A stretch of DNA of 56,130 nucleotides, counting the filler, from Sluysia triapertura (lineage: Eukaryota): the NCBI GenBank assembly GCA_046118255.1. It is 4 parts of 4 records of this genome, joined end to end, with 100 filler letters (N's around TTAATTAATTAA, not from the genome) between each part and the next. Parts side by side here need not be neighbours in the genome. Positions count along the whole stretch, not along the records: positions 18,099 to 30,749 come from JBJNIA010091899.1; 3 more parts are not named here. One strand, 5' to 3'. The notes under the pieces are model-generated. The model was not told where the DNA came from. It searched no databases and saw only the letters and a program-made list of their open reading frames with translations. The position numbers and the translations under genes are program-made. The stretch's first letter is position 1; every line of letters begins with the position of its first letter. Positions 12,101 to 33,034 of the stretch are shown here, piece after piece.

Positions 12101-14372
12101 ATATTTTTTGATGCTAAAAATATTAACTTTCCTTTAACTTTCCTTTAACTTTCCTTTAACTTTCCATTCCTAACCTGACCTCTATGAGAAAGTGATATTC
12201 AAAAAGTGTCATCAATTTTATATTCTGAAGTAATAACTTTCAAGCAATGCATAGGTTTTGGTTTTATCTTATTACTTGGAAATAGTATTCTGGTTACTAG
12301 TCCTAAGTATATTTGAATCTCTCCTTATAATACTTGAAGTTCATTTGTACAGCATCATAAATTCATTAATTGTTTCATAAAAGAATGTGGAGTGTTATCC
12401 AAATCAACATTATCATCAAATATGTTTGAAACCACAACTGCATTAATAGCAGAAGCTTTTAATGCTTCATTATGGTTTCCTAAAGGATAACGGTAATCAT
12501 TCAAAAATTCCTATTATTGATGCGTCATTTGATTTAATTATATCGATGACTTCTTCCACTAATACAATTACTGGTAGTTCCATGAAAACATTAATTGATT
12601 AATTAATGTTATTATTATTTCGTCATTATTTCGTCCTTATTCTTATTCATTCTTTTTTCTTTGTTCTTAGTTGATTTTACGTTACTATTATTTTTATATT
12701 TATTTCGTCCACTTTCCTTCTTTCTTTTTCTATTTCTTGTAGATCTCTTTACTTCTTTCTGTTGTTCAATTACTTCTGTCTCTTTGTTCTTCTTTTATTC
12801 CTTTTTCCTACTAAAGTTTAGGAAATTTTCGCAAAGATAATTTATAAAAAAATTTCTTGTTTTCTTCTTGAACTACTCTTTCTTTCTTACAGTCATCATA
12901 GTCCAGTTTTATTCTGTAAAATTATAGTAATACTTGTGCTTTTTCATCTGTTAGACTGCCTCGTAGTCTTCCAGTCTTATACTTTCCTTTTTATTATAAT
13001 TATATTTTATATTTATAATTATTTTACTAATATTATATTTTACTATTTTTATCATTTTTCTTATCAAACCTTACCTTTCTTATGGAACCCTGCATCCTTA
13101 ATGGTTGGTACAATTTCGTGCGTAACGACCTTGTCTACCGCAATTATGACAAATTACTTCCCTTCTACGTTAGTCTGTGTTAGCTTCATCATTGTAATTA
13201 TAATTATTGGTTCTGCTGGGACTCTTGCTTCTACACGCCACATTACTGTTTTGATTATCTGTTCAAGTGCTCGCTGACTAATGTTACTCTGATAATTTCC
13301 TTCACATTCTATTGTGTTTGTTTTTCTTGGGTTATAATAATTATTTCCTTTCAAATTATTTGTTTCTTCTGTAACTGTTTCCTTGAAAATAATTTTCAAT
13401 CGATCACTATTATTTAACGAATTCCTATACTTACATTATCCAACAATTTTATTAGTTACTTACATAACTTATATTATCCTTTTCTTCAATTCGGAACCTT
13501 TTGATACCTCTTAATTTTTTAACTATTTCCTTAAAAGACCGGCTGTCTATTAAACTTACATAAATTCTTAATTCGGAACATAACCCACTTTTAAATTTAT
13601 CTACCAAAATCATTTCTTTCTTATCTTCAGGAATTTTTGCCACGAAACTCTTAAGCGCGCAAGCAAATTCATATACAGTTTCAAGTGGATTTTGCTTTCT
13701 AATACCTAACATTTTCTCATAATATTTTCCTGTCATCAAAAGCAACTTCCTTTGTGAATGCGTAAACGAAAGAATTACAGTTTTGCTTTTTTGAATGATC
13801 CTTGTAAGTTTGAATTGCTATTTCTGTTAAATAATTTTGATTTTAATTTTTTCTATCTCCATCCGGCCTATAGCTTCTGCTCTGCTGTCATATTAAAACA
13901 GGAAATTACAAAGCTCTTCTTCGGCTCCACTTAACTTATGTATTCCTGGAAGTAAAACTACGGGTTTTGAGGCATGAACAAGTTTCGTCATATAATCGTT
14001 GGATTCGTTGATAGGTATGGCCATTCTTCTATCGAATTATGACGAGGTTCAGATCTAGGAATTCTAGAGTTTTCTTTATACTCTTTATCTAAAACTTATA
14101 TATATATATATGTTTTATTTCAAGGTTTATTTATAACTTATATAATTTCAACGAAATGTCGATTAATATATCCTTAAATTAATATCTTTCGCTTATTTAT
14201 ATAACTACTTTGATTATAAATGAAAGTTAATTATTGTTTTTTTTATTTATTTGTATAGTTAAATATCGTATCAATTTAAGCAGTTGATATATTATGAGCA
14301 CTACATATGTATTCTTAATTTATTTTTACTTATGTTAATTTGTAATTATGTGTTGTCCCAATTCCGGTGCCA
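9188..14372 (-). mobile_element. Decayed Ty3/Gypsy LTR retrotransposon, internal region (gag-zinc knuckle-extra domain-PR-RT-RH-IN)
   Basis: gag ATG at 14024. Knuckle CHNCGRQGRYARNC at ~13110-13150. Protease VITALIETGAVASLI at ~11470-11515. RT YFTTLDLRNSYWKI...KTAF-like...MLFGLIGAPAT at 10640-10837. RH and IN remnants at 9400-10270. Many stops and frameshifts. Confidence 0.92.
14355..14372 (-). promoter_or_regulatory. Primer-binding site, tRNA-Lys3-like
   Basis: TGGCACCGGAATTGGGAC is 14/18 identical to the Lys3 PBS TGGCGCCCGAACAGGGAC. It lies 5 nt after a ...TGCA end and upstream of gag. Confidence 0.75.
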
Positions 14373-15504
14373 AATTTTGCATATCTTTTTTCTAAACCTT
14401 ACAAAATGAATATGAATGGTTTGCTTCAGTCTACGGTTAAACTGGTAATTCAGTGACGTATTTCTAAGAATTTTTCAAGTATTAATTATTAATCTAGTCA
14501 TTTACCTATATCTTTATTATACTACAAATTTTAAACTAATAATCTTTTATTGGTTATTTGGTGGCTTCCTAAACTTTATAGTTATTCTTATTCTTGTAAT
14601 TATCTCGATTAACCTATTATTCAAGAGTTATTTCAAAAATTCCTTCAACCTTGATTTCTTTTATTATTATATTAAATAACAAAGTCTACTGTTCTTTATT
14701 CACAAAATAATAAAGTAGTGTTGTATAGTGCAAACAACAATAATAATAATTTGTAACAGTAGAAGACTCCTTTTTTGGACTTCTTTTGCTTTAAAATATT
14801 GAATTTAATAAGATTTTATTACTAGCTGAAGGTAGGATTGTGAGTAAGATTTTGATATTTCCGTTAAGCTTAAACTTAACAAAACTAAACTTACATAAAC
14901 GAATCGAAATAACTGGATCAAATAAATTCTCGAATGGATATACACCTATACCAAAATCACAACATATACATTTTAAGATTCCAATTACAAATTTTATTTT
15001 TTTATAGAATGTTGTGTTTTGCTCTTAGAATTTTTTAATTTTTATATATTTAATTTTTTCAGCTGCTTTTATTTAAGAATAATTCCAAATTATAAAATTT
15101 TATGGTATGGCAAATCGGAGCTTCGATTTCTTGAAGGATATTATCAGAGTACTGAAGACAGGAAGAAAAAACAAAATATTAAAATTATAAAATATTAAAT
15201 TATAAAATATTAAAATATTATAAAATAAAATATTAAATTATAAAGCTGTTGCAGCTGTTCTTAAATTATTAAATTTTGTTTTTTCTAACTTTATTACAAT
15301 TTAAAACATTTTCATTAATTTTATTATTTTTCTTTTAAATTAATTTAAATTAATAGTTTAATTATTTAAATTTTCTGATGGTGAATTTTGCAAATACCTT
15401 ACACAAGTGTATTTGCTTAAAATTAAAATTAAAAATTAAAAAATTTACTTTATTATATTTACCTTTATTCTTTTGGAAATTATATAAAGTACTGATAAAG
15501 TAAT

Positions 15505-16035
15505 AAAATGTAACCTCCTCACTGAGCGACATCAGATTATGCACAAAAACAAGTCGTTTGCACCGATCAATCGCTTTGAACCAGAGTGTGCTTGTGAAAG
15601 TATACGGATTTCGGACGAAGCAAGGTTTTCATTGCGACCGCCTTTGAATACACAAAATGATCGCATTTACCGAGAATTACGTGTAAAAACTGACATACCT
15701 GAGGAAGATCTGACATCTGTTCTTTGTTATGCTGCAGTTTCATGGTATGGCAAATCGGAGCTTCGATTTCTTGAAGGATATTATCAGAGTACTGAAGACA
15801 GGAAGAAAAAACAATAAACCAACAAGTTTATTGTGAAAGGATATTCCGCGATATGTGAAATGTAATGGACGACCAAATATGGACAGGGCGAATGATGGTT
15901 CCAGTGCTCATCAGCAAAGGCTTCAGTTTCTTCAGCAATCTACTTCTGATTTCATTCAACCGGAAGATTGGCCCTCCAAAAGTCCAGACTTAAATGTCAT
16001 GGATTACTGCGTTTGGAGCTTGTTATTGTCACAAG
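15505..16035 (+). mobile_element. Tc1/mariner (DD37D/maT-like) transposase pseudogene
   Basis: ISDEARF...LNTQNDRIY, CYAAVSWYGKSELRF, DGSSAH and WPSKSPDLNVMDYCVW, with frameshifts. Confidence 0.9.
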
Positions 16036-17721
16036 CTCGATATTGGAGCTTCATATTGTTACATTAACTCTGTAAATGATGTAATTATGTAAATTGTTTT
16101 GAATTCATTTTTCATATTTTGTATAAGTACTTTAATATTTTAGTTTTTGAAAATAATTTAAGTTTAAATTTTACTTTTAAATGTTTATATAAAACATTCA
16201 ATTTTTTAAAAATTAATGTGAATAATATATTTAATTAAGTGGAAATATTATTAGTATTAGAGATATTATCATAGAAGTCAATATTTTTGTTTATACAGTA
16301 AAACCAAATGTTTTTCTGGTAGTTATTATCGAATAATATTATCAAAAAATTTTTATCTAATAATTTTTATAAAAATATTTGTTGGTATATTAAAAAAGAA
16401 TTTATATTTTTATCAAAAAATACTAATTATCAAATTTTTATATTTTTTCGGTTAAATGCAAATAAACAAATTTTAAATATTGTCGGCGGATTAAAAGTCT
16501 ATAGAACTATAGAACAGAAAGCTAAAAACTCACAATAAAAAGACGTTACTGAGAGACTTAAAGTTGGTCAACAAATTGTGAATTTTTCTAAACAAGATTT
16601 GTCAACCAGATTCGAGTGAATACTATTTTGAAATCGATAATTAAGTTTAATTCGATACTGATACTTGGATATTCGTTGGAAAAAACGACGAAGAAATTTT
16701 AATTCGACATTGATATTTGGATATTCGTTAGAGGAAACCAAAATTATTGGATATTTACTGAAATCATATTCTTTAAAAATTCTATTACCTGTATCCATGA
16801 ATAAGTTAGCAACTTTTTATGAAGTTTTTAGCTTTCATTAAGTTAGCTTTAAAATCAACTTAAAATCAAACAAAATATCATCCAAGCATTCGCCTGGATT
16901 AAAATCTGTTTAAACTTTCATATTTTATTAAAAGGAGAAATTCCTTTACGGTCGTTATAATAATTATTATTATTATTATTATTTTTCTGAACTGTGTTTG
17001 TTAAATTTTCTTTGATAATATATTTTCTTGTTCGACACGTTATAATTTGAATTTACTATAAAGTCTAGTATAAATTTGTACGTCAAAGGGTAAATAAAAT
17101 AAAATAAAAAGTATTTAATTCAATGATAAGTTAAGCTATTAAGAAGATATACGCAATAGCAAAAAATCTTGAGCTCTAAAGTTATTAAGGACATTTTACG
17201 TAGATTTTCGACATTTGACATCCTGTGAGTACGTCTTCCTTGAGATACAAACCGCATATCACAGACGAACCCGAAAACTAATATCATAATTGTTACTACC
17301 GAATCAATAAAAGTAGAACAACTCTATTGAAGATTTGAAAACGAGCTTTGGAAGAGCTTGGAACGATATATCACAAGTAACCCTTCTAAACACTACATGA
17401 GCATGGATTTGTAGATTAAGACGCTACTCTCAAGTGCACGGACGACATTTTGAGTATCTTAACCGGGGTTCGTGGCTTAGTATAAATAATATAATATATT
17501 ATAATATAAATATAAATATAATATAAATATAAATATAAAACGCTAATTAGCGCCAATAGTATGTTTTTTTATTTCTTAGCATTCCTTTATGTAACAAAAC
17601 AATCTGAAAAATTTTTATTACTTCTCGAGGTAAAAAGGTTGAGAAACGCTGATATAACACATGCCTTTAAAAACCTTTGTAAAAATAAATAGCTGTTTGA
17701 CAAATTTTCTGCTTTTCTAGT

Positions 17722-17866
17722 GACTTCATAAAATGGGCTGGCCGGGAATCGAACCCGGGACCTCCCGCTTCACAGACGAGCAGTTCGATGCCCGTCTAAC
17801 AATTTTATTTTATTATAGTCAATTATATTATCATTATTTATGGCACGTTAAGCCTTTACCCCAAGA
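17722..17866 (-). mobile_element. tRNA-containing mini-LTR, copy A (D-arm deleted, one end eroded)
   Basis: Homologous to 23792-23963 and 52136-52291. Box B GGTTCGATTCC is present. Confidence 0.8.
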
Positions 17867-17909
17867 ATTTTACATAATAATAATAAATTTAAATTATTGT
17901 TATCCTTTG

Positions 17910-17925
17910 GTTTATTATTATTATC

Positions 17926-17998
<73 letters not shown>
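17910..17998. repeat. (ATT)n microsatellite running into the gap
   Basis: Direct reading. Confidence 0.97.
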
Positions 17999-18098
17999 NN
18001 NNNNNNNNNNNNNNNNNNNNNNNNNNNNNNNNNNNNNNNNNNTTAATTAATTAANNNNNNNNNNNNNNNNNNNNNNNNNNNNNNNNNNNNNNNNNNNN
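17999..18098. other. Artificial contig linker N44-TTAATTAATTAA-N44 (six-frame stop)
   Basis: The same 100-nt block occurs three times. Confidence 0.97.
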
Positions 18099-18141
18099 TA
18101 TTTTCATCAGTTATTTTAATCTCGAAAATCACAGTAAAATT

Positions 18142-18173
18142 GAAATGGGACTCTTATTTTCGGACAGAGGGAG
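18142..18173 (-). mobile_element. Right TIR of a Stowaway-like Tc1/mariner element, followed by TA
   Basis: Exact reverse complement of 43958-43989. Confidence 0.85.
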
Positions 18174-18399
18174 TAATTAAATTAAAAAAACATAAAAGAT
18201 GCTAAATTTATTTATTAAGTCTAAAATAAAATTTAAATATGGCAAAATTGTTAATTTTCGGATATACCAGGTACCAATTTTACTAAATAGATAAAATAAT
18301 TCTGTTAAATTTAAATTGGATAAATAGTAAACAAAATTTACTTTTACATCGTCTGATATCAGGAAATGATAAACTTTTAGGTACAATTCAGCAGCAAAA

Positions 18400-19298
18400 T
18401 TAACTTGTACGTAACATGATTTGACAGGATTTCTGTTTGGTCTTGGTTTTTGGTTGAGCATTCTCGGATCCGAACGGGAAGTTTAACACTAATTTTACTG
18501 GATTCTTAATTTCATACATCAGAATCATCTCTAATAAAGGCTAAATTGTTAAGTATATATGTCTTGTCGATATCGTGCATTAATGTTTCACATTATTTTA
18601 AGAGTGACTATGTCTTCACTATTATGTGACAAAGTCCAGACATTAAGTTTCCACTGTGTTGGAAAATTATTTTTAACTGAGATATCAAGAAGTTGTAAAT
18701 TATTAAACAGGATCTGATAATCCGTTTCAACATCATCATGACGTGTTGCTGGATGGAATTGCATTCGTTTAAACATCTTTTTATTTCCTTTACATAATTT
18801 ATTACATGATTTCAGTAGTATTTTGAGAACTCTTTGGATCTTTTCCTCTAATTTATAACACATCATTTGATCTACCTCCTCAATTACCAAATATCGTAAA
18901 GAATAAAAAAAATTTCTTTAATTTGATTTGTATGATAAAGGATCATTGAAATTCGAGCAGTGGACGCTACTAAAATGTGCACATCTAAAATCATATGTAT
19001 CTCTCCAGTTGTATCCTTTGTTCATCCTTATTAATCGGACATAATTTTGCATTACTAATTGAACAGTTGGAATAAAAATCATTATATAAATAAATGGTCG
19101 ATCTTTGACCAAACATTGTTGAATAAATGGAATACCGTAGCGAACAATCTTCTTACTTCCGGTTTTAGTTAAACTAATATCGTCTTTGAGCATCAATAAT
19201 AAAGGCATAGCATGTTGTTGTATATGAGCCGGTTTTGAATATTTCAATTTTGAAACATGATCTAAAATTGCAGATATTTTGGTTACAGTTGTTATCAT
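18400..19298 (-). pseudogene. Intronless decayed DEAD-box RNA helicase (cargo)
   Basis: Q-motif YSKPAHIQQHAMP, Walker A-like TKTGSKK, motif Ia IPTVQLVMQ, DEAD-like LVIEEVDQM and SAT-like FHPAT, all in the correct order, with frameshifts. Confidence 0.85.
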
Positions 19299-19529
19299 TT
19301 TCTTACCAAAGATAATTCTAATGTACCAAATATTTTTGAAAAATCAAAATTATTTATTTTTAAAATTTTCTGTTTTTTATTTAGTAACTTTTTGATTGAA
19401 TTGTGAGTTAGATAACCACATAGGCATGATTAATTAATTTTTGCTCTTAAATTTTTATTGGTTACTCACTACAATGCTATTATTCCTCATAAAATTCTTA
19501 TCATAATGTGATTAATGACAAACAATGTA

Positions 19530-20572
19530 GGATAGTCTGAAAATGATTGGACGTCCAATTAGGTATGAGAAAAATACAAAGCAGAAAGAAATCAATTGGA
19601 CACTCAATCAACCGAAATAATCGAGTTAGTAACTGTCACCAGTTATAGTGATTTATTTTAATGTAGTGTCACTAGTGACGAACGGTCTAAATAGACTAAC
19701 CTACAAAAAGTAATACAATGTTGCTGGTTAAAAGTATGGAATGACAATAATTAAATAGCAACACTATTAATAATAACATTAACAACAATAAAAATGGCTC
19801 AAATGACAATAATAATATAGAGACAAATCTTTTTAAAAAAATGGTCTAACATGATCTTTCTGTTATTTTAATTTTAGTTTTCTGAACATAAATAGGTTTC
19901 TTTTAATTTAATCTTTTTAACTAAAGTATTTTAAATACAATGTGTAAAAATAGCTTAAAAATGCTAAGTTAGAGTTTTCGGTGATATTCATTACTGGATG
20001 TTGAAAGTTTGTGAGTTTGTGATGTTTTGGTTTGATTTTAAGATTTATAATGTAATTCTGTAGTTATGAGATTGTGAATAAAATGTTTTAGTTAAAGTTT
20101 ATTGTACATTAGTGATTTTGAATGTAGAAGTGATTTTGATATTGTAACTTTATAAATAAGAAATGTTTGAGATGAACTTGAATTGTAGGTTAATAATGAA
20201 TGTAATTATGAATAAAATATTTTTAATGGCTTTTTAATGTATGTTGTAAATTCTGAAAGAGAATGTAATTTTAATATTATGATTTATGATATAGCGATGT
20301 TTTGAGGTTATTATACAGTTTTAGTGAAGGTAGAAAAAACTAAAATATAAAGAGTTTTGCTGTAGGAATGGTTAAAATGTTATAGAGTGTGATTTTATGC
20401 GTTAATTTTGCAGTGTTTTGGATTAACCTTTTTTAGTATTAAATGTGAATTTGATGTTATGCAATTGTATATTTCGAATATTTGGAAATATTTTGAATTA
20501 TGAAATGTTGTGAAAGGTGGTTTGTTTATTTTTTTCTTTATAAAATTCTGAGATATTGGGTTGGTCACTACA
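19530..20572 (-). mobile_element. 5' module of family Z (TGTAGTGACCAAC start, C/A-skewed tract, GTCAC and CCAAT inverted repeats)
   Basis: Collinear similarity to 53288-54300, e.g. TTCATCTCAAACA and CATTAAxAAxCCATTAA. Confidence 0.65.
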
Positions 20573-20807
20573 ATAGGTTTGAATTACGTTACTATGTTAA
20601 ATCATGATATATTTACATTGATGTAGATATATACTGTTATAGTTATCCCAAACTCTCTTAGAGTTTCAAATTCTTTTTCACTCAATAATTATTGCCGCAG
20701 CTGTTTTCAGTAGTATGATTTCATTACCTGGCCAATTTTGTTCTATATTTAAGTATGTGCATACAATCTTAATCTGTAATTTTGTGATTACATGGCAAAT
20801 TTTTATA

Positions 20808-21309
20808 CAGTGGTTGCCAAAATATTAGCTTAAAGACTATTTTTGTTAATATTTTTCAAGGATACTCTGAAACTATTTATCAAAAGTGTATAAATACATG
20901 ACATTTACCGACACGGAAAATGTAAAATGTTGGAAAAAATAGTAATTTCTCGAAAAAATTCTGGTGAAAGTAAAATAATAGATAAAAATATACATAAAAT
21001 TTATATATTATTCATGTAGAATGATAACATAATTTGCTACAAATCAAATATTTACAAACTGTTGTATCACTACTTTGTTTTTCCTCCTTTGTTAGCCAGT
21101 AATTTCCTGATCCTTAAAAGCACGCCACGGATGAACTTGGGGCACAAGTCTTTTATCAGGGTTTCAATAAGTTCCGTCCTGGTAGTTGACAATCTCACAA
21201 ATTTTCTATGTGATTCATGTCATGTGATTCCAGGCCAGGGTAGCAAACATTAAGAAAAATCAAAGAAAAACATTTTTCCTGTTTTAGTCTGATAGTTTGG
21301 TCACTACTG
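20808..21309 (-). mobile_element. Internally deleted Tc1-like element with TA TSD
   Basis: TA-CAGTGGTTGCCAAA...TTTGGTCACTACTG-TA. The internal minus strand reads RIRKLLANKGGKTK*, the Tc1 C-terminus. Confidence 0.85.
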
Positions 21310-21887
21310 TACATGTAACTTTGACCATATAATTTATTTAATTATATTGGCTTGTTTGTTTGCATTGATTTCTGTAGGTATTTTGTATTCTTAAGGTATT
21401 TTGTTCACTCATTAACTTTTTCTCTTTGCTAATTAAGTATGGTAAGTTCCATTTACATTTTCTTCATTCGTGTTATTTTTAGTTATTCTTTCTTACATTA
21501 GTATAATTTAAATTTATAATGCATTTTTGTGACTTATGCCAAATTTACAACTTACACCTATCTTTATATTTGGAACAGATGGCATAAATCTAAGAGTAAC
21601 TAAAATGCAAGATTAAAGTAAAATAAAATCTAATGCTGAAAAATATTATAATAAAGTAATAATAAATATATATTTTTTACTTTATAATATATTTAGAAAA
21701 GCACAAATCACAAATAACAAAACAAATAATCGAAGCCAAAAAGCATTTTATACTTCGAATGATACCACTGCTAATAAGCATTTATTTACAAAATTATCGA
21801 AGTACTTTTAGGTATGTAGTTTTTGTTTTCATTTCAATGCACATTGGTCAGACACAGTGAACAATTATTTACAAATTGACATTTTAA

Positions 21888-22083
21888 CACGTTCACGGAC
21901 AGAGACGGCTATAGCCGTCTTTCTCGTTATTCATGCTGTGACAAGAAGGTTATATGACATGAAGGTTATAGTCACATGCTAATTAGTTCAGATAATTACA
22001 TTAAAATACTACAACTATTATAATTAGCATTACTAAAGTAAAACCGATATTAATCAATCAACATTTTTTGTGACGTGAACGTG
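21888..22083. mobile_element. piggyBac-type MITE with TTAA TSD
   Basis: TTAA-CACGTTCACG...CGTGAACGTG-TTAA. Confidence 0.85.
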
Positions 22084-22929
22084 TTAAAAGAAAATTAAAA
22101 TTATATAAAATTTTAAGCAAGTGGCAACAAATTTTACATAAAATATGAAAAAAACATATACCGTTTTGGAAAAAAATAATTTTATTCAAATAATTTAATC
22201 GCATTCGAAATAGTCTTTTGTCGACAATGTAACGTGAAAAATTCTTCACAGCCATTTTTTTGGAATCATTGTTATCGAATTATTGTTTTCTTGTTACACG
22301 ATCACAAATATAATGAATGTGCTATTAAGAACAATTTCTTAGCACGTTACCTCAAAGTGCGGCTATAGTCGCCAATTTATGTCAACTTGAAAGCAAATGA
22401 CGGCTGTAGCAGATACATATATTTCCATTAATAAAAATGGACCCTAATAAACACAACGTTTACTAGTGCATCAACAAAAAAATATAACATTCTACTTAAC
22501 AGCTAATTACATTTTCTATACGAATATTAATGTCTTGAACAAATCAGAACATGTCATGATAAGCCGTCAAGAGTTTTCCTCAAAAAACTTTGAAAATGTG
22601 TGCTACATTTAGTTTTTAGACATGCAAATTATGTCTAAATAATTTTAAAAAGTGCATTTTTTGGGCCAAGCTGAGGAAACAAAAGTATGCTTCAAAGTGT
22701 TAACAAAAACAATCGATAATTATTTTTAATATATCTTTAAGAAAGACCACTTACAACAAGCCCTAATTATCATTTCATCAGTTCTTTATATAAGTCTAAT
22801 TATTATTATTATTGTAATAAAATTAAATTTATATAATCTTACAATTTAATATAATATTTTTAGATTATATATTTTGGAATTGCTGCATAAAATATTCAAA
22901 TCTTTTAACAACGATGACCACGATGTCTT

Positions 22930-23345
22930 TTTGAATGAATATCATAACAATTATCATCTGTTGCATCATTTATCGAAAATGATATATCGAGTTTTATTAC
23001 AAGTATGATTGTTATTTTTATTACAATGTTGAGGAAAAAGTTCAGGCGCCTTGTTAAAATAATGAATCTTCACCTTCATCGAAGGACTCAAACAAGTGAC
23101 CTTTCATAATGTGTTTCAATGATCCTAAGACACTAGTCAGATGGAGCAACATCTGGGTTATAGGCTGAACGTGGTAGAATTGTTACACCTTCAAATTCTT
23201 CAATTTTCTTATCGTTCTTTCTGGTTGTATGAGGTTTTGCATTATCTTGTCGATACAAGACTTGATACAAACAAAGTTCGGCAGTAATGGAACGACCATC
23301 CGTTCCACAAAAACGGAAATCATGATCTTCTTTCCAAATTGATTT
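22930..23345 (-). mobile_element. mariner (DD34D) transposase relic
   Basis: QDNAKPHT...VTILPRSAYNPDVAPSD matches HDNAxPH...HPPYSPDLAPSD. Confidence 0.85.
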
Positions 23346-23791
23346 TGGTTTGTGTCAAGTCATAAATTTAAAGCTAAATCTAAATACTAAATCTGTAAAA
23401 AATAGTAGTAATAAATAATAAATCCGATAATGAAATTATAATATTTTTTTCACGATAATAATAAATTTCACTAATAAAAATAGTATTTCGATTTGCGGGC
23501 CATATAGCGTAACGCTCAATTTTATGTTTATAAAGAGTCAATAACAAATTACAGATAAGAATAAAAAATTTAAGGTGACAAAACTTACGAATTTAACTTG
23601 CGACACTTTACGTAGAAATGTCTTTTGGTCCCGGGGATTCCTGATCAATTTCAGTCAAGATAGCTGAAGTGATAACCGAATTATACTACATTGTTCGCAT
23701 CACGTCACTGTCAAGACTTTCACTTCAAATAGATAGTGTTTTGTTTTAAGTATTTATAAAATTTACGAATAATTTTAAAGTGGATAAGAAT

Positions 23792-23963
23792 TGTTGGACT
23801 TTAATAAATGGAATGACCAGAAATCGAATCCAGAACATCTCGCTTCTCAGCTATGCATTTCGATACTCTGACCACTGAGCTATCAGCCCGACTAACAATT
23901 TTGTTTCACTATAGTCAAATATACTCTCATTATTCTGTGGCACTTTGGGCCTGTATCCCAACA
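23792..23963 (-). mobile_element. tRNA-containing solo mini-LTR, copy B, 4-bp TSD GAAT
   Basis: GAAT-TGTTGGAC...CCCAACA-GAAT. Internal box A TAGCTCAGTGG and a decayed box B. Confidence 0.88.
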
Positions 23964-24128
23964 GAATCATTGATTATTAATAAGCATAAATTAAAAAATA
24001 AATTCTAGTTTTAAATAATCTAATTTAAATAAATTTTTCGAATTTGATGTAAATAATGTGAAATAATTTAGAAACAATTTAATTTATATTGCCCTAATAT
24101 CTACTGCATAATAAGTACTCAAAAGTGC

Positions 24129-25000
24129 TTAAAATAAATCCGAAAGAACTTTGCCTTTTTTTAATATTTCATAATCTTTCATTAATTTAAGATTCTCTGT
24201 AATTTTTGAAACATAAGTGGTACATAACCTACAATCTAGCTTATTATCACTGTGGATTCTGCATAAATTATTATATCTTATTGATGCATTCATTTTGTTT
24301 TCAGAATTTTTTATTATTTCCAAGAGATATTCAGGACCTCCATAACATAACCAATGTAATTCTTTAAGATAAGGTGTTATACGTGATCTCCATCTTACTT
24401 GGAAAATTAGTTTTGTTGATTGATTCATTATTGATTGTAATCTTTGTATTTAATTTTATTTAGGATACTGGAGAAAATGTTTTAGAATGTTTAAGATTTT
24501 GTAAAACACTTGTTAATTCTAAACGAGGAAACATCTATTCAATATTCTTTTATAGAATGGGAATAAGAAATTTACTAAATAATATGGATCTATTTGTTAA
24601 ACAAGGTATTAATTCTGCAATGATTAACGACGACATTTATATGGTTAGTAGTGTAGATTAATTTTTTGTATTATTTCCATTTATATAGACTCATAATATT
24701 GTAACATATTTTTATCTTTTAAAAAATTAGAAGAGATAATTTATCCAAATTTAAAGCCCAAGAACTTATATTTGGAAATTATGCATGACATTAAATTTAT
24801 ATTATGATTCAAAATATAACACAATACCTCATGAAGATCCATATATATACAAACAAAAATCCGCCACCATTTGTTCATTAAATGTTCTTTAGTGTCACTT
24901 TTTTCAGAGTCTGCATCTGAATCTCTCTTTGTGTTTATCGGTAAGGTTTGTGTTTGGATCAAATACAAATGCTTAACAATGTTTTATTTTGCTGTTCTAT
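24129..25000 (-). mobile_element. L2/CR1-clade LINE relic (endonuclease remnant to ORF2 C-terminus)
   Basis: RITPYLKELHWL (L2 C-terminal HITPxLxxLHWL motif). NGGGFLFVYI APE motif near 24845-24872. Confidence 0.75.
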
Positions 25001-26472
25001 AAAGAATATTTTGTGAAATTCTTATGCAATTCAATTACTAATCCAATTGCGTGAGATCATCTTCTATACTCCACTTGCACTTATCACACTTAAGACTTTC
25101 CATTGCGTATTTCATAACTTTATTCGTATTCCTTGAATAAGCAACTAGAGGTACTTCAAAGTAACACACAAACTATTGACAAACTATTGATAAATACCCA
25201 ATTTTATGTAAGACCAAATCAAGAATATTTTGATCAAACAAAATCAAAATTCTAAATAAGAATATGTATTAGATGAATATATTTTTGAGAACTCAGTTAA
25301 AGTTTTGATGTCATGGAATGTTATTAGTTCAGATTGTAGAAATTTTAAATTGTAGAAATAAATAAAGCAAAATTTTTATCAACCAATTTCATGTTAGAGG
25401 TAAGTTCCTCTTTGTAAGGTGATACTAATTTTGATTAAAAAAATTAGTATCTTAAAATACACGTAAATTTCATTTTTTAATGAAAATTAAGTGTCCCAGA
25501 TATATTGAGGAGTAAAATACAGAGTAAACTAAATTATTAATAAAAAGTTAAAGGCTAAAAATAGCTATAACTGTAATATTAAAAAACGATTTTATCTTTT
25601 CTTTCATTTTTATTTTATAATTTGACGATTTTGTATATCATTGGATTTATAATTTTTATTTCATCGTTAATTGTATTAAGATAATTACTGTTTATAAAAA
25701 ATATTGTGTAATAAGCATCAAATTGATTAGCCGCTTTGAAGTTTTACGATTACGACTAAAGTATTTATTAACTTATTAAGTTACTGGAACGCCCGCTATA
25801 GGTTGTAAGACGCTTAGTGTAATCGGACACTTCTAAAAATACTTACCGTGTTAGAAAAACCACAACAAAATTATCAACATCATATAATAACTTGTTTGTT
25901 GTTTGTGACATGTAAAACCTTATTTCTCTTGACTAATTTTAGTGTAAACTTTTTCCATACACTTGTAAAGATGTAAAAATTTTAATTTTATTTTTTATGT
26001 TTTATGTATTTACAAAAGGTTGTAAAATTATAATATTATAAAAAGTATTATTTAAATTATATTAAGATTAAAATTATTATTCAATTATTTTAAGATATTA
26101 CAAAAAAGAAACAAACAAAATTGTTTATTTAAATTAAAATTTAAAAGGTCTTTATGTATATATAAAGACATACAAAAATAAAGAAGACACAATTAATCAC
26201 ACAAAGAAATCTGAACAAAATCTAAATTCGCCATTTTGGTTTCGCAAAGAAAACGAAGTCATCACGAACCATTTTGTCATCGATATTATCCGGCTCAACA
26301 ACATCAATTCATCTTCCAAGTTATAGTGTAAATCCCGCACATTCGATTAGAGGGATAGCACTCTCCAAATATCAGAAGCTCAAATCCATTAAGTCAAAAA
26401 CTTGAACAATATTTCTAGAGGCCAATTAACAATATTATTGATTAATTCGTAAGTTTGTTTCACATAGTTGTA

Positions 26473-26636
26473 AACTCACATTGAGTTAAAATCTAAACGT
26501 AAACTATTTTTTTTCACGGTTGGTCCTTAAGGCCAATCACAAAATCAATTTAAAATATAAATTCACTACTCTTTAGTTGGTCCTTAATGTGAATTATAAA
26601 ATCATTATTACAAGGTAGAGTCCAACGGCTAGACCT
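26473..26636 (+). other. Third copy of the hairpin+AAAATC array and TCCAACGGCTAG motif
   Basis: AACTCA-CAT-TGAGTT-AAAATC, then TTGGTC-CTTAA-GGCCAA..AAAATC, then TCCAACGGCTAG at 26621. Confidence 0.6.
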
Positions 26637-27700
26637 TTATTATAACTTAATTTTTATCATTGTAGTTTTATTATTCATAAACTTTGGTTATTAATAATTA
26701 TTTTTGGATTTTTATAAATTAACATTATTTTATTCTAATTTTCATTTGGTTACATAATAAAATTTGAATTTTGTTATATATTAGTGTTTCTTTTATAATT
26801 TTAATCATGAATCATTAACATCATTTTAACTTATTTCAGCAATCAATTTTTTTTAAAACTATTATAAGTCTTATTCTGATTATAGTGTAAGTTTGCTAAT
26901 TTCTTAGAACACCACAAAAAAGGCTAACGATTAGTATAATTAGATTTTACTTTTAAAAGAGTAAAGAATAAGAGAATAATACACTTGTTAACTTTGTTCA
27001 CATAAACTTAATTATCATGCATGCCAGTGTTGGTCACAATTGTTTTTTTAGGTTATTCAGCAACAAACGATTTTGCCCAGTACTGTTAAGACAATGAGTA
27101 TTTTTATACAGACTAATTCTTAATAATTGTTTTCACGTAATTTTTACAGGTACGCCATTAGTAAGTCATACACTGTAAACGAACTCAGAATGGTAAATTA
27201 TTTTGCTGCAAGTTAGATTCTTTTATTAAGAAAAAACCCAGCACTAATAATTACATATTTCAATACGACTAAAATTATAATAATAATATCTATAGTTCAT
27301 GACAATTATATACAATGATTATGTTAGTTTTTTGAATGAGTCAAGTAATTTGTTTAATGTTCTATGTATAAGATGTTTTTGTGTGATGAATTTTATATAA
27401 TTTCCCTACAATAAAACATTATTCTTTGTAAAAACAGAAATACAAATAATAAATATGAATCATATTTATTTTCAATGAAATACGTTAAAAATACAAAAAA
27501 AATAATAAATTAATTTGATCGTAATATGCTTTTTTCGTTACCAAACAAAAAAAATAAAAACATGATCAATATAGAACTGAAATTGTTAAAGGAATTCGTA
27601 TCTTTCTTTCGTTTTCATAAAACACGGTGGTTCGACAGTTTATCTTTCTTTGATACATCAAAAATAATCCATAATTAAAAATTAAATCATTGAATTAGTA

Positions 27701-29473
27701 TCACTTTTCATTTACTGATTCCAAATTGATATCATCGTTTCGATGAATGAAAATCTTGGTGAAAATGATTTTCGAAGTAAACACTTCAAACCATTCAACA
27801 ATCAAATTAGTCAAATTATCAAAAAAGGTATTGAAATTACACATTTCAGAATTTGAATTGTATTGGCAATTGAAGTTGGGTAGATAACGTTTTAATAAAC
27901 GATTTTGTATAACAATGTACAATTCATTGAGAAATTTAATTTGTTTAATTATCAAATATCGATTTAAACTTAAGGTACAATTGCAAAATGATAATTGAAT
28001 AATACTGCTTTTATTTAATGTTACTTTAGTGTTCAATAAATAATTTGAAATTATTTCAAAAGAATAATTATGACTATCATCACTTTCACTCGATACTAAA
28101 TGATTTTTTAGACATGGCATTGTGAAATGTGTATTTTCGTAATTGAAACTAATGCTTTTACAAATTAATCCACATTTAAATATGATATTTCGTCTTGACA
28201 AATAATAATATAAATATTTTGGATAATCTTGAAATACAGAATTATGTAAATAATTTATAAGTTTTTCTAAATTATCTGTATTGCTAACAAATATAGTTTC
28301 ATATTCGACTTCACAAATATAGGCTTGATTTAAAAATTGATTATCAATAACGATAGCAACGATTTCGTTATGACATTTCATTGACTGTGTCTGTTCGATT
28401 TTAACAATCATATTTTGTTTATTAAAACATTGACTTGATATTGTATCCATTTGATAAAATAAATTCGAATATGACGAACTAAAATAAGAAATGGCTTCTT
28501 CGATAAATAAATCCGTTTTATGATTTAAATTAATTTGTGAATAAAATGAAATCGAAATTGAATAATTTTCAAACTTAAAATTGTGTAACAAATTTAAGTA
28601 TCTATTACTGAAATTTAATATCTCACAATGTTCGTATAATTTCAAATCTATTTGAATGTTTACAATATTTTTACAATCATTAAAAAATGAATTAAAACAA
28701 AAAATTTCATTAATATATAAATTGCTTTTATAATATAAATTAATTTTGTAAATTGAAATTGAAATTGAATATTGTTTAATATCAGAAAAAGATAAAATAT
28801 CTAATTCAACATTTTTGTAACTGATCATTTTAAATTGATGAAATAAATTCAATTTATTTTCAATTTTTTCTCTGTGATAAAATTTATTAAAATAAGACAA
28901 ACTTACGAAAAAAACATTTTCTTGATTAAATAAATCTATTTTGTTATAAAACTGTTCATTGAAAACAATGGGAATTAAAATTAAATTATTATTTGATTCT
29001 GTAACGTATGAAAAATTTCTGGCAATTTTTGAAAATTTTATAATTTCACAATTATCATAAAATTTAAATTTCACTATTTGATTTAAATTATTTACATATA
29101 AATTAGAAGATATGCCAGCTTCTTTGACATGTAAATCAATTTTGTAATAAAAACTGTGAAATACCACTGAAATTGAATTATCTTCAAAATTATCATCGTA
29201 TTCTAAATTTAATATTAACTTTGGACAACTAAATATTTCACAATGTTGAAATAGTTTCAGCTTGGTTTGCAATTTTGCCGACATTAACAAAAAAGAATTT
29301 GCTAGATCCATTTTTGATAAATCTAACTTGCCTAATTTTAATAATTTGTTTTCTAAGCGTTGTATTTTTGTTTTAATAAATGGATCATTAGCAATTTTTG
29401 ACATTCGTTTTAACTGGAAAAATATTTCTTTGGTTGATTGTTTAATTGATTTATAATATTTCATTTGAGCCAT
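27701..29473 (-). CDS. Intronless 590-aa orphan protein with four ~65-aa internal repeats
   Basis: 1.77-kb open frame in very AT-rich DNA, with an AAAATGG start context. Repeats start KLFQHCEIF / KFYDNCEII / NLFHQFKMI / KLYEHCEIL, each followed by a KIDL/KSNL/KTDL motif. Confidence 0.7.
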   Translation of the reverse strand: MAQMKYYKSIKQSTKEIFFQLKRMSKIANDPFIKTKIQRLENKLLKLGKLDLSKMDLANSFLLMSAKLQTKLKLFQHCEIFSCPKLILNLEYDDNFEDNSISVVFHSFYYKIDLHVKEAGISSNLYVNNLNQIVKFKFYDNCEIIKFSKIARNFSYVTESNNNLILIPIVFNEQFYNKIDLFNQENVFFVSLSYFNKFYHREKIENKLNLFHQFKMISYKNVELDILSFSDIKQYSISISIYKINLYYKSNLYINEIFCFNSFFNDCKNIVNIQIDLKLYEHCEILNFSNRYLNLLHNFKFENYSISISFYSQINLNHKTDLFIEEAISYFSSSYSNLFYQMDTISSQCFNKQNMIVKIEQTQSMKCHNEIVAIVIDNQFLNQAYICEVEYETIFVSNTDNLEKLINYLHNSVFQDYPKYLYYYLSRRNIIFKCGLICKSISFNYENTHFTMPCLKNHLVSSESDDSHNYSFEIISNYLLNTKVTLNKSSIIQLSFCNCTLSLNRYLIIKQIKFLNELYIVIQNRLLKRYLPNFNCQYNSNSEMCNFNTFFDNLTNLIVEWFEVFTSKIIFTKIFIHRNDDINLESVNEK

Positions 29474-29739
29474 TTTTTGGATTGTACTTATTGTTATGAT
29501 TAACTTTTTTGTAATATTTTACATTGATTTTTAATTAAAAATGTATTTTATAGTAAAATATTTTATTTTTGTGATAAAGAGTTATCAAATTTTGTTTATT
29601 TGATATTCAAAAGTTTGGAATTGGCTTTTGATTTTAAATTATTAATCATAACTTTAGATGATATGAAACATTTATTTTTAATTATCTGAAAATTATTCCA
29701 ATTCAAACTACGCGTATAAATTTTGTTTTAGAACAATAT

Positions 29740-29900
29740 TATTAGGTTGTCATCAGAACCCATTAAAATCACAAAATCAATTAAAATGCTTTATAAATAT
29801 GTAAAATCATTCAAAAAATAATTATTTTCCAAAAAAGAAAATAAAATTTCTTGAAAGAAAATTAGCTTCTAAAAATTGAATCCGATTTTCATTGGCTGAT
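29740..29900 (-). mobile_element. Inverted copy of the LTR-like terminus seen at 7180-7528
   Basis: TATTAGGTTGTCATCAGAACCC...GAAAATTAGCTTCTAAAAA. Confidence 0.65.
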
Positions 29901-30749
29901 TTTAAGAGTTAACTTGTGGACAATATACGAATTCAATACAAATTCTATGTCAAAAGTAATTTATTTTTATTAAGACGATATTAATTTTGTATAATGAAAT
30001 TAATAACAACTTTCACTTAAAATCCAAATCCTTTTGGTAAAGTGCAAGGTTTCCCTGATATACTGAGGGTTAAAGTAGAGGAAAAATGTCAATTATTTAA
30101 AAGTTAAATACTAAATATAAGTATTTCTATAACTCATATTTTTGCCTTTAAAATAATTTGAAATTTTCTCAATACTTATTTTAGGTATAAAATAATGGTA
30201 ATAGTAATAAATTACGTAAGTTTCCATGTCTAAATGAAATTAAATATTCATAACGTAGATAAGTAACACCCGTTCCCGGAGCAATTCATCTAAAATCATA
30301 AAATATACTCAAATTAATTTAAGAAATTTTCAAAACCCCGATTTAGTGAGGAGAAAATATAATAATAATATATATAAAATATAAAATAATATATGTTAAA
30401 TCAAAGATCTATAAGATTTTGATTTTAAATTAATAGCTTTATATATAGTTTTTTATACATTGATTGGATTGATTGTTAATCACATTGATTAAGAAGATTC
30501 TCATCTTATTTCAAGCTTTTACATTATAATTAATTTAAACGCCATTTTTAAGACATAGGACGTTTACACTAACTGGACCCTTCTCAATTTTGTTTTGCCG
30601 TAGTGTTGGGATTGCCAAAATGTAGATCAGAGATGAGTGAGAAACATATAGAATTATTAGATGAAAAAAAACTGATACAAAGTGATGGATTGAACATGGT
30701 AAACATTGTTGGAATAAGAATCATGAAAGTAAAAACATCTATAATAATG

Positions 30750-30849
30750 NNNNNNNNNNNNNNNNNNNNNNNNNNNNNNNNNNNNNNNNNNNNTTAATTA
30801 ATTAANNNNNNNNNNNNNNNNNNNNNNNNNNNNNNNNNNNNNNNNNNNN
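30750..30849. other. Artificial contig linker
   Basis: N44-TTAATTAATTAA-N44. Confidence 0.97.
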
Positions 30850-33034
30850 GTAATTTTTGAAAGTATTTTCATAAAAATATAAATAAAAAGCAAAAAGAAA
30901 AATAACTTGATTTGTTTAATCACTTTCTGAATTGCACATTATTTTAAAAATATAATTTTTTTCAATCAGTTCAATCAGTTCATATTTAATCTTGTTCGTT
31001 GTGATAAAACAAACATACAAAGAATTAAATATCATCAAGACATGTTTAATTGCTTATAAGTTAACAAATTTTTCATAAAACGATTCTTCATTATAATACA
31101 AAATTTATGCTTTATTTATTTAGAATTTTAATCAATTTAAAATGTTAAAAATCAATGATTGAAATAGCTCAAAAAGTTTTTAAAGATTCGATCAATATTT
31201 CATTATCTATGAAACACGTGGTTACCTATATGCTTTTCTTTTGTTGTATAAATAATTGATATATTATAATTTTAATACTAAAATTGTTTTGCAATTATTT
31301 AATAATTGTTTTTAAAAATTCATATCTAAGGTAAGATCAATAAGTATATGTTTTAAGTATTAATAAAAAGGTTTGTTTTAAAATAAGTCAATTTGTTTTA
31401 AGATGCAGAATGTCAAAAAGAATTAAAAATTAAAAAGTAATTCACATCTATATAATTTAAACTTGAAATTAATTTATGCGTAAGATGTACTTAGTTTATG
31501 AAGTATATGTATATATTTTAACTGAATTATGCGAATAAGACATTATTTAATTTTCTAAAAGATCTCTAAAATGTTCGAGGAAGACATTATAGATTTGTTT
31601 TATATTCGAAACGTTAGAAAGGATAATAAATCTTTACAGTGAATATAATTAACTGTTACCTTTCACAAACCATTATAAAGCAATTCATTTTCTGAAAAAA
31701 TAAGGTCGACGATTAATTAAAAACTAAGTCAGAAAAATGATTGAAAAAAATCAGAAAGAGTTGTCATAAATTAGAAAATTAACTTTGCGCAAATTTGATC
31801 TCGTGGTGAAATCAAAATAGTTGTACAAAATATGATTAATAAATGGATCAAACAAAATTATTGACTAAATTATCACTTGAGTCCTTTGTCTAGTAATTGA
31901 TAATTTTCTTTGTTAAAAGATTTTAAAAATTTCTAATCATTAATTTACGGTGCAATTGTATATACGAAGTAGCAGCCAATCAAAAGCACATCGAATTCTA
32001 GAATTTTCTAGAAAATTCTTTTATTTTCGTTTTTTGAAAATAATTTCCTTTTCCCGAAAATTAACTTTAATCATATATTATATTTTTTTAAAGATTTCAA
32101 ATGACTGTGATCAAACAAAATAAAGCAATTACGTGGTGTCACAATTTTCACTAAAAATCAATTTCAAATTTTAAACCATGTTTGCAATTATTTTATAAAT
32201 TTCCGCTACACTTACATCTACATCATTTATAACATATTCGTGATATCTTTTGTTGTAAGAGTCATATTTTTATATAATGGTGTCAGTAAAAACTTAAAAT
32301 TAAATGTAATATCAAACATAATCTTACTTTTGATTTCAATAATACTTAAGTTATATCACAACTATAATCATTGGTTGTATTTGCATCATTTATTATCAAA
32401 TGTACATGCACATCACTTGGTATATAATTTAGAATATTTGATTATTTAAAATGATGTGAAATAAATGGTCTACATTAGAATTTATAAATAAAACTTTATT
32501 TTAAGTCAATGTGATTATTAAATAAAAAGGATTAAAGTAATATTTTGTTATTTTCTTCAATTAACAAAAGATTTTAATAGTTAACTTCTTTAATAGATAA
32601 ACAGATTTGTTAAACTAAAACAATCCGTTTTTTTCGAAACAATGATGATTAATCCGGAAAATTAACTATTAAAATCTTTTGTTAAACTTTTTTGTAGTTA
32701 CTTAAATTTTATTTATATTTAAGAAGAATGATTCTACATTTATGTAAGAAAAGTTTAAAAAGAAAATTAAGACTAATTCTTATTGATCGGGTTTGACATA
32801 TACCATTTTATATTTTGTCTTAACTGGAATCATGATATATCCTAATTTATTCTCGTAATTTTGAATTATTCATTTCTTTTGATAATTTGCGACTGTGGCA
32901 TGTCATACAAAATTCACAGTCTCGCAACTATTTATATTGGCTAGTAAAATATTTATTTATTTTGATTATTATTATTATTTTTATTGCAACTACTATTATC
33001 TCTTATAATTAGAAATAATTTATTTTTAATGTAG

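What the first reader, a model, noticed from the sequence alone, without database searches (positions are those of the whole stretch)
23792..23963. tRNA-containing mini-LTR family (Helenus-like TRIM solo LTRs), four copies in 56 kb
Seen: this looks like a tRNA-SINE, but the tRNA cassette is internal. The 156-172 bp unit has TGTTGG...(C/T)AACA inverted termini, no poly-A tail and a perfect 4-bp TSD (GAAT), which are integrase signatures. Copies lie at 17722, 23792, 45136 and 52136. Established: Cassandra TRIMs carry 5S sequence in their LTRs, and Helenus TRIMs carry tRNA-like sequence with 4-bp TSDs in animals. This appears to be a very abundant, probably undescribed family of that type, a Pol III-driven parasite of Gypsy machinery.
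Basis: partly seen in the sequence, partly recalled or inferred. Interest (0 to 1): 0.8.

Follow-up and report, generated by a model that had tools for sequence, protein, structure and literature searches.

The report
tRNA-bearing mini-LTR, probably a Helenus solo LTR
A 172-base mobile insertion carries a decayed tRNA-like gene and has the ends and 4-base target duplication of a retrotransposon long terminal repeat, so it is most likely a solo LTR of the recently described Helenus type, a new family of a known kind.

Summary
Window 23792-23963 is a 172-bp unit with TGTTGG...CCAACA ends, flanked by GAAT/GAAT. It encloses a tRNA-like segment that passes Rfam's tRNA threshold and lies on the minus strand, 23889-23809.

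- **It is a real insertion.** GC is 40% against 25% in the flanks. It sits in a decayed mariner copy. A contig of a public run carries the same site without the unit and with a single GAAT.
- **It is multi-copy.** Summed contig depth is up to about 2,500 times the flank. The 74-nt leader upstream of the tRNA-like part is repeated along with it, which argues against an ordinary tRNA-SINE.
- **The layout matches published Helenus LTRs** (Kojima 2024): TG, a 74-nt leader, a tRNA-like part with A and B boxes, a 17-nt tail, CA. Length and the 4-bp duplication fit animal Helenus.
- **It matches no published Helenus sequence** by short shared words, and it lacks the T-run those LTRs carry.

The defining test could not be run. 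Paired LTRs with a primer-binding site and a polypurine tract need more of the genome, and only one copy was available. The host organism stayed unknown. Verdict: probable new family of a known kind, of moderate interest.

The parts
23788..23791 (.). left copy of the 4-bp target-site duplication (GAAT)
   Evidence: only one GAAT is present in the empty-site contig
23792..23963 (-). whole 172-bp LTR-like unit (sense strand = minus); 40% GC in 25% GC flanks
23958..23963 (-). 5' terminus in sense orientation, TGTTGG (TG end)
23890..23957 (-). rest of the 74-nt leader upstream of the tRNA-like part (U3-like); repeated together with the tRNA-like part in other copies
   Evidence: (depth 12,000-26,000 at 23891-23919 against 12 in the flank)
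23809..23889 (-). 81-nt tRNA-like segment, Cys(GCA)-like with an expanded variable arm; a pseudo-tRNA
   Evidence: Rfam 33.2 bits; ARAGORN, relaxed
23872..23882 (-). box A, TAGCTCAGTGG (fits the TRGCNNAGTGG consensus, which is given from memory)
23820..23831 (-). box B, decayed in this copy (GGATTCGATTTC); the majority of other copies read GGTTCGATTCC
   Evidence: variants at 23821, 23829, 23832 and 23837
23798..23808 (-). tail after the tRNA-like part (TTTATTAAAGT); no run of four or more T
23792..23797 (-). 3' terminus in sense orientation, CCAACA (CA end)
23964..23967 (.). right copy of the target-site duplication (GAAT)

Best explanation
The unit is a solo LTR of a small non-autonomous LTR retrotransposon of the Helenus type (TRIMp3). 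These are TRIMs whose LTRs contain a tRNA-derived RNA polymerase III promoter.

Inferred life cycle:
1. A full element (LTR, primer-binding site, short internal part, polypurine tract, LTR) is transcribed. Transcription probably starts at the tRNA-like A/B-box promoter, sense position 75 of the LTR.
2. The RNA is reverse-transcribed and integrated by the proteins of an autonomous Gypsy-type element.
3. The integrase joins the TG..CA ends and leaves a 4-bp duplication.
4. Recombination between the two LTRs later leaves one LTR flanked by the original GAAT duplication.

Shown here: the insertion, its exact ends, the duplication, the tRNA-like promoter part, its multi-copy status, and the match of its layout to published Helenus LTRs. 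Inferred: the two-LTR parent, Pol III transcription and the Gypsy helper. This copy has a decayed B box and sits in a dead mariner, so it is probably inert.
For: - **Anatomy.** TG, 74-nt leader, 81-nt tRNA-like part with box A intact, 17-nt tail, CA. 172 bp, GAAT/GAAT.
- **Published Helenus LTRs read have the same order.** Helenus-2_NGe, for example, is 163 bp with roughly 72/72/19 nt by my count. All animal families have 4-bp TSDs and LTRs of 104-323 bp.
- **Empty site.** One contig in run X1 joins 23778 to 23963 with GATA between. This reads ...TTTTAA GATAAGAAT CATTG..., which is the site without the unit, with one GAAT and a 4-nt indel.
- **Boundary.** A 204-nt contig matches 23933-23792 and then continues unlike the window.
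- **Copy number.** Depth is 12 in the flank and 13,000-31,000 in the core. At least 112 contigs cover 23907.
- **Leader belongs to the unit.** The leader upstream of tRNA +1 is as deep as the tRNA-like part, so it is part of the mobile unit. A Pol III/LINE-made SINE copy would not carry it.
- **Selection on the promoter.** The majority of other copies restore a canonical B box, as expected if the promoter is under selection in the active lineage.
Against: - No second LTR, PBS or PPT was seen. The sequence beside the unit is not PBS- or PPT-like, which is expected for a solo LTR but gives no positive support.
- Only one copy could be read.
- There is no sequence similarity to any published Helenus family.
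- No T4 run follows the tRNA-like part. Every published Helenus LTR that I read has one.
- TG..CA ends plus a 4-bp TSD arise by chance about once per piece.
- The empty-site contig has only 21 nt on its shorter side and may be a paralogous site rather than an allele.
Confidence: 0.58

Rival explanations
1. It is a solo LTR of a longer LTR retrotransposon, autonomous or a large non-autonomous derivative, that picked up a tRNA-like or SINE sequence in its LTR. On this reading it is an LTR but not a TRIM or Helenus.
For: Kojima notes that 'not a few' Repbase LTRs contain tRNA-like parts, and that only those of TRIM length and structure were named Helenus. Nothing here shows the length of the parent element.
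Against: 172 bp is short for an autonomous Gypsy LTR and sits in the middle of the animal Helenus range. The leader/tRNA/tail proportions match Helenus LTRs. No Gypsy coding remnant lies in the piece.
Confidence: 0.12
2. It is a non-autonomous cut-and-paste DNA transposon (MITE) of a superfamily with TGT..ACA ends and 4-bp TSDs, such as Ginger, whose transposase is related to Gypsy integrase (from memory). It happens to carry a tRNA-like segment.
For: A perfect 6-bp inverted repeat at the ends, a 4-bp TSD, small size, a single unit with its own TSD, and an empty site.
Against: The inverted repeat stops after 6 bp, whereas MITEs usually have 10 bp or more. The oriented layout (leader, tRNA-like part, short tail) copies that of Helenus LTRs. 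No Ginger-like ORF was seen in the piece, which is weak evidence because the piece is small.
Confidence: 0.12
3. It is an atypical tRNA-derived SINE copied by a LINE.
For: It has a tRNA-like part with A and B boxes. A very high-copy repeat that may be a LINE 3' end lies 120 bp away, so LINE machinery may be active.
Against: - A 74-nt leader upstream of tRNA +1 is part of the repeated unit.
- There is no A-rich or simple-repeat tail.
- The TSD is only 4 bp.
- The ends are TG..CA.
- The 3' end is unlike the neighbouring repeat's end.
- Depth is not highest at the sense 3' end, though this is confounded by this copy's own divergence there.
Confidence: 0.06
4. It is a free-standing single-LTR-sized retroelement that moves as the 172-bp unit itself, an integrase-dependent analogue of a SINE with no two-LTR parent.
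For: Only single units have been seen. The unit has its own promoter-like part and integrase-type ends.
Against: No known mechanism makes a full-length cDNA with both ends from a transcript that starts at position 75 without LTR-type strand transfers. The absence of pairs here rests on a sample of one.
Confidence: 0.08

Closest known systems
Helenus (TRIMp3), animal families, Kojima 2024 (PMC10886601)
   Same: The LTR begins TG and ends CA. A leader of about 70-130 nt is followed by a sense-oriented tRNA-like part with A and B boxes and a short tail. Animal LTRs are 104-323 bp and TSDs are 4 bp. The tRNA-like part is not a functional tRNA, and the elements are high-copy.
   Different: No sequence similarity to any of the published consensus sequences by k-mer look-up. 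The unit is AT-rich (40% GC), whereas the wasp families are GC-rich. It has TTTATT instead of a T4-T6 run after the tRNA-like part. The tRNA-like part resembles Cys(GCA), whereas the paper aligns the wasp families with tRNA-Lys. The two-LTR form, PBS and PPT were not seen, and the host is unknown.
Cassandra and Ajax (TRIMs with 5S rRNA-derived promoters)
   Same: The same idea: a small-RNA gene-derived Pol III promoter inside the LTR of a miniature LTR retrotransposon.
   Different: They carry a 5S promoter rather than a tRNA one and make 5-bp TSDs. Cassandra is found in plants and Ajax in nemerteans.
tRNA-derived SINEs (SINE2)
   Same: A tRNA-like head with A and B boxes, short length and high copy number. 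Kojima proposes that Helenus arose by SINE2 insertion into a TRIM LTR.
   Different: In SINEs the tRNA-like part is at the 5' end, the tail is A-rich or a simple repeat, and TSDs are variable and longer. Here there is a 74-nt leader, no tail and a 4-bp TSD.
Ginger-type DNA transposons and their MITEs (from memory, not tested)
   Same: TGT..ACA-type termini and 4-bp TSDs made by a Gypsy-integrase-like transposase.
   Different: They have long terminal inverted repeats and no tRNA-like part is known in them. Here the inverted repeat is only 6 bp.

Membership tests
Helenus (TRIMp3) | The LTR contains a tRNA-derived sequence with conserved A and B boxes | tested here: met
   Rfam tRNA 33.2 bits against a gathering score of 29. 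Box A is intact. Box B is decayed in this copy and canonical in the majority of other copies.
Helenus (TRIMp3) | LTR termini TG...CA with a short inverted repeat | tested here: met
   TGTTGG...CCAACA. The boundaries are backed by the empty-site contig and by a contig match ending at 23792.
Helenus (TRIMp3) | 4-bp target-site duplication (animal families) | tested here: met
   GAAT/GAAT for this one copy. No tally across copies was possible.
Helenus (TRIMp3) | Two LTRs flanking a tRNA-complementary PBS and a PPT | not testable with these tools
   Only one solitary copy lies in the piece. Scans of the other collections found no copy. The single reads call (15) listed no informative loose ends at the unit's borders.
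Helenus (TRIMp3) | Miniature full length (311-1263 bp) with no coding capacity | not testable with these tools
   No full-length copy was available.
Helenus (TRIMp3) | Sequence relationship to a described Helenus family | tested here: not met
   Eleven 8-15-mers from this copy and from the majority version were looked up in the paper's DataS1. Only a generic B-box word (3 hits) and the terminal TGTTGGGA/TGTTGGGAT word (4 hits for the 8-mer in DataS1; the two shown are fungal LTR ends) matched. The wasp LTRs read show no similarity. Helenus is defined by structure and is thought to have arisen several times, so this does not exclude membership.
tRNA-SINE (SINE2) | tRNA-like promoter at the 5' end, A-rich or repeat tail, variable TSD | tested here: not met
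   A 74-nt co-repeated leader, no tail and a 4-bp TSD.
MITE / Ginger-like DNA transposon | Terminal inverted repeats of 10 bp or more and a matching autonomous transposase element | tested here: not met
   The inverted repeat is only 6 bp. A partner element could not be searched for.

The most novel reading that the evidence does not exclude
The family has no two-LTR form at all. On this reading a 172-bp unit with integrase-type TG..CA ends, its own tRNA-derived Pol III promoter and a 4-bp TSD is mobilised as a single unit. That would be an integrase-dependent counterpart of a SINE, and a new class of non-autonomous element.
Probability: 0.08. Interest if true: 0.75.

Novelty: new member of a known kind. 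Interest (0 to 1): 0.33.

Why it matters
Helenus/TRIMp3 elements were described only in 2024 and from a patchy set of hosts. A further abundant family in a very AT-rich genome, unrelated in sequence, would support the idea that tRNA-promoter TRIMs arise repeatedly.

Such units are also a practical nuisance. They inflate tRNA and SINE predictions and scatter Pol III promoter boxes through a genome.

The lack of a T-run after the tRNA-like part could bear on how a Pol III transcript reads from the 5' LTR into the 3' LTR, if the active copies also lack it. For the locus itself the insertion is inconsequential, because it lies in a dead mariner.

Tried and rejected
**Searches for more copies**
- A second copy in the piece: none (repeat finder, blastn word 7, Rfam).
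- Pattern scans with a conserved A-box word: metagenome contigs, viral contigs and GTDB genomes gave no hits.
- A B-box/acceptor word in metagenomes gave one hit, L001. It is an unrelated cluster of ordinary tRNA genes and was rejected.
- The open frame through the unit was used as a peptide query to fish predicted ORFs on public contigs: no candidates.

**Attempts to identify the organism**
- The 590-aa ORF gave nothing in the word search, exact look-up, ESM Atlas or full HMMER search.
- The ORF in the neighbouring repeat gave nothing.
- Run and organism names are coded.

**Other checks**
- A literature search for the sequence word gave nothing, and no later Helenus/TRIMp3 surveys were found.
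- PBS or PPT beside this copy: the flanks are not PBS- or PPT-like, as expected for a solo unit.
- Chance was considered as an explanation. The end motifs alone are not significant, but the combined evidence rejects it.
- I did not align the unit with published Helenus consensus sequences. They exist here only as paper text, and I did not type long sequences.

Full report
**What is there**

The piece (18099-30749) is very AT-rich, 16-31% GC in 500-bp windows. At 23792-23963 lies a 172-bp unit that begins TGTTGG and ends CCAACA. GAAT lies directly on each side, at 23788-91 and 23964-67.

Rfam's tRNA model matches 23889..23809 on the minus strand at 33.2 bits (gathering score 29, E 8.6e-4). This is the only RNA-family hit in the piece. 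ARAGORN misses it at default settings. With relaxed settings it draws a Cys(GCA)-like cloverleaf with an over-long variable arm at sense positions 75-155. It is therefore a pseudo-tRNA.

Read on the minus strand, the unit is laid out as follows:
- TG end.
- A 74-nt leader.
- An 81-nt tRNA-like part, with box A (TAGCTCAGTGG) at 23882-23872 and a decayed box B (GGATTCGATTTC) at 23831-23820.
- A 17-nt tail beginning TTTATT.
- CA end.

There is no A-tail and no run of four T on the sense strand.

**Is it more than chance?**

The end motifs alone are not. TG plus a 6-bp inverted repeat plus a 4-bp duplication, 100-400 bp apart, turns up about 1.2 times per shuffled piece, and three times in the real one. 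Four other facts carry the case.

1. These ends frame the only tRNA-like hit in 12.65 kb. My rough estimate for that happening by chance is about 0.02.
2. The unit is 40% GC and the 500-bp flanks are 25% GC.
3. In the contigs of public run X1, one contig joins 23778 to 23963 with GATA between. Written out, this is the site without the unit, with a single GAAT and a 4-nt indel upstream. It is a precise empty site. The contig has only 21 nt on its shorter side, and the flanks are themselves mildly repetitive. It may therefore be a paralogous site in another copy of the host repeat rather than an allele. Either way it fixes the borders.
4. A 204-nt contig matches 23933-23792 and then runs on for 61 nt unlike the window. 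This is most simply read as another copy with a different flank starting exactly at 23792.

**Copy number and extent of the repeated unit**

Summed contig depth is about 12 in the unique flank (23604-23705). Inside the unit it is 13,000-31,000 at 23842-23943, and at least 112 distinct contigs cover 23907. The tool warns that this is not a copy number, but the family is clearly abundant.

The depth is as high 20-30 nt upstream of tRNA +1 (23891-23909) as in the tRNA-like part. The leader therefore belongs to the mobile unit. Depth falls towards both ends. This copy differs from the majority at 13 listed positions (7.6%), five of them within 17 nt near the sense 3' end. That is enough to clip local matches, so I draw no conclusion from the shape of the profile. 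Applying the majority letters restores a canonical B box, GGTTCGATTCC.

**Context**

The insertion sits in a decayed mariner. ORF 23133-23270 (minus) aligns to Mos1 transposase residues 242-284 (E 2.6e-4). Frame fragments upstream of it resemble the rest of the transposase. By position, the insertion site falls in the N-terminal part of that dead gene. No Gypsy-like coding sequence lies in the piece.

**Comparison with what is known**

Helenus exists in the literature (Kojima 2024, PMC10886601). Its members are TRIMs whose LTRs hold a tRNA-like sequence with conserved A and B boxes. They have a PBS and a PPT between two LTRs. Animal families make 4-bp TSDs and are thought to use Gypsy machinery. 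Fungal families make 5-bp TSDs and are thought to use Copia. Solo LTRs with TSDs are common. Animal LTRs are 104-323 bp.

The consensus LTRs I could read in the paper's data file all share one order: TG, a leader of about 70-130 nt, a sense tRNA-like part, a T-run, a short tail, CA. Helenus-2_NGe, for example, is 163 bp with about 72/72/19 nt by my count. The unit here has 74/81/17.

There are two differences.
- No 11-15-mer from this copy or its majority version occurs in the published set. Only a generic B-box word and the terminal TGTTGGGA(T) word match. The wasp LTRs are GC-rich and visibly unrelated.
- The tail has TTTATT instead of the T4-T6 run seen in every published LTR I read.

**Best reading**

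The unit is a solo LTR of a Helenus-type TRIM (confidence 0.58). About 0.7 goes to a solo LTR of some LTR retroelement, counting the rival in which the parent is longer than a TRIM.

- Shown: the insertion, its borders, the TSD, the promoter-like part, the abundance, and the agreement of layout.
- Inferred: the two-LTR parent, Pol III initiation at sense position 75, the Gypsy helper, and LTR-LTR recombination.

**Rivals**

- A MITE of a superfamily with 4-bp TSDs and TGT..ACA ends. The 6-bp inverted repeat is too short, and the oriented layout argues against it.
- An atypical SINE. The leader, the missing tail and the 4-bp TSD argue against it. The unit's 3' end is also unlike that of the neighbouring high-copy repeat.
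- A single-unit, integrase-dependent element. This is not excluded, but no mechanism for it is known.

**Limits**

- I had one copy.
- The single reads call listed loose ends only for the neighbouring repeat, which is far more abundant. No PBS- or PPT-bearing neighbours could be read.
- Pattern scans of metagenome, viral and prokaryote collections found no copy. One search gave only an unrelated tRNA cluster.
- The host could not be named, so I cannot say whether it lies outside the taxa already known to hold Helenus.
- Repbase and Dfam were not available.

**Verdict**

This is probably a new family of a known, recently described kind. Interest is moderate (0.33).

Noticed in passing
window 24080 to at least 24400 (the laid stretch ended there): A far more abundant repeat. 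Summed contig depth is 35,000-350,000 against about 12 in unique flank. It carries a 99-aa minus-strand ORF (24129-24428) with the motif ITPYLKELHWL, which from memory resembles the C-terminal tail of some LINE ORF2 proteins. There is no Pfam hit beyond a weak chance match and no homologue in the word search.
   Followed up: partly
window about 22950-23650, minus strand: A decayed mariner copy. ORF 23133-23270 aligns to Mos1 transposase residues 242-284 (E 2.6e-4), and frame-shifted fragments of the rest were seen by eye. The tRNA-bearing unit is probably nested in its N-terminal part.
   Followed up: partly
window 27701-29473, minus strand: A 590-aa open frame in about 22% GC DNA, far too long to stay open by chance. 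By eye it has internal repeats (motifs such as SISISxY). It has no relative in the word search, the full HMMER search of 1.84 billion representatives, Pfam or the ESM Atlas. It is an orphan gene or an unknown element.
   Followed up: partly
window 18588-19298, minus strand: Two adjacent ORFs resemble a DEAD-box helicase (weak Pfam DEAD hit, 20.6 bits, below the cut-off). By eye the catalytic motifs are spoiled: TGSKKI in place of the Walker A TGSGKT, and EEVD in place of DEAD. It is probably an intronless pseudogene.
   Followed up: no
window 20099-20598: A strongly strand-asymmetric stretch, with GC skew +0.63 and almost no C on the + strand. It looks like a C-depleted, possibly hypermutated, sequence. 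It is unexplained.
   Followed up: no
window 23846-23927 (seen in a run X1 contig): One contig carries a variant of the unit in which the central 80 nt, including box A, are replaced by 34 unrelated AT-rich letters (table 5c). It is a deletion or replacement derivative of the family.
   Followed up: no
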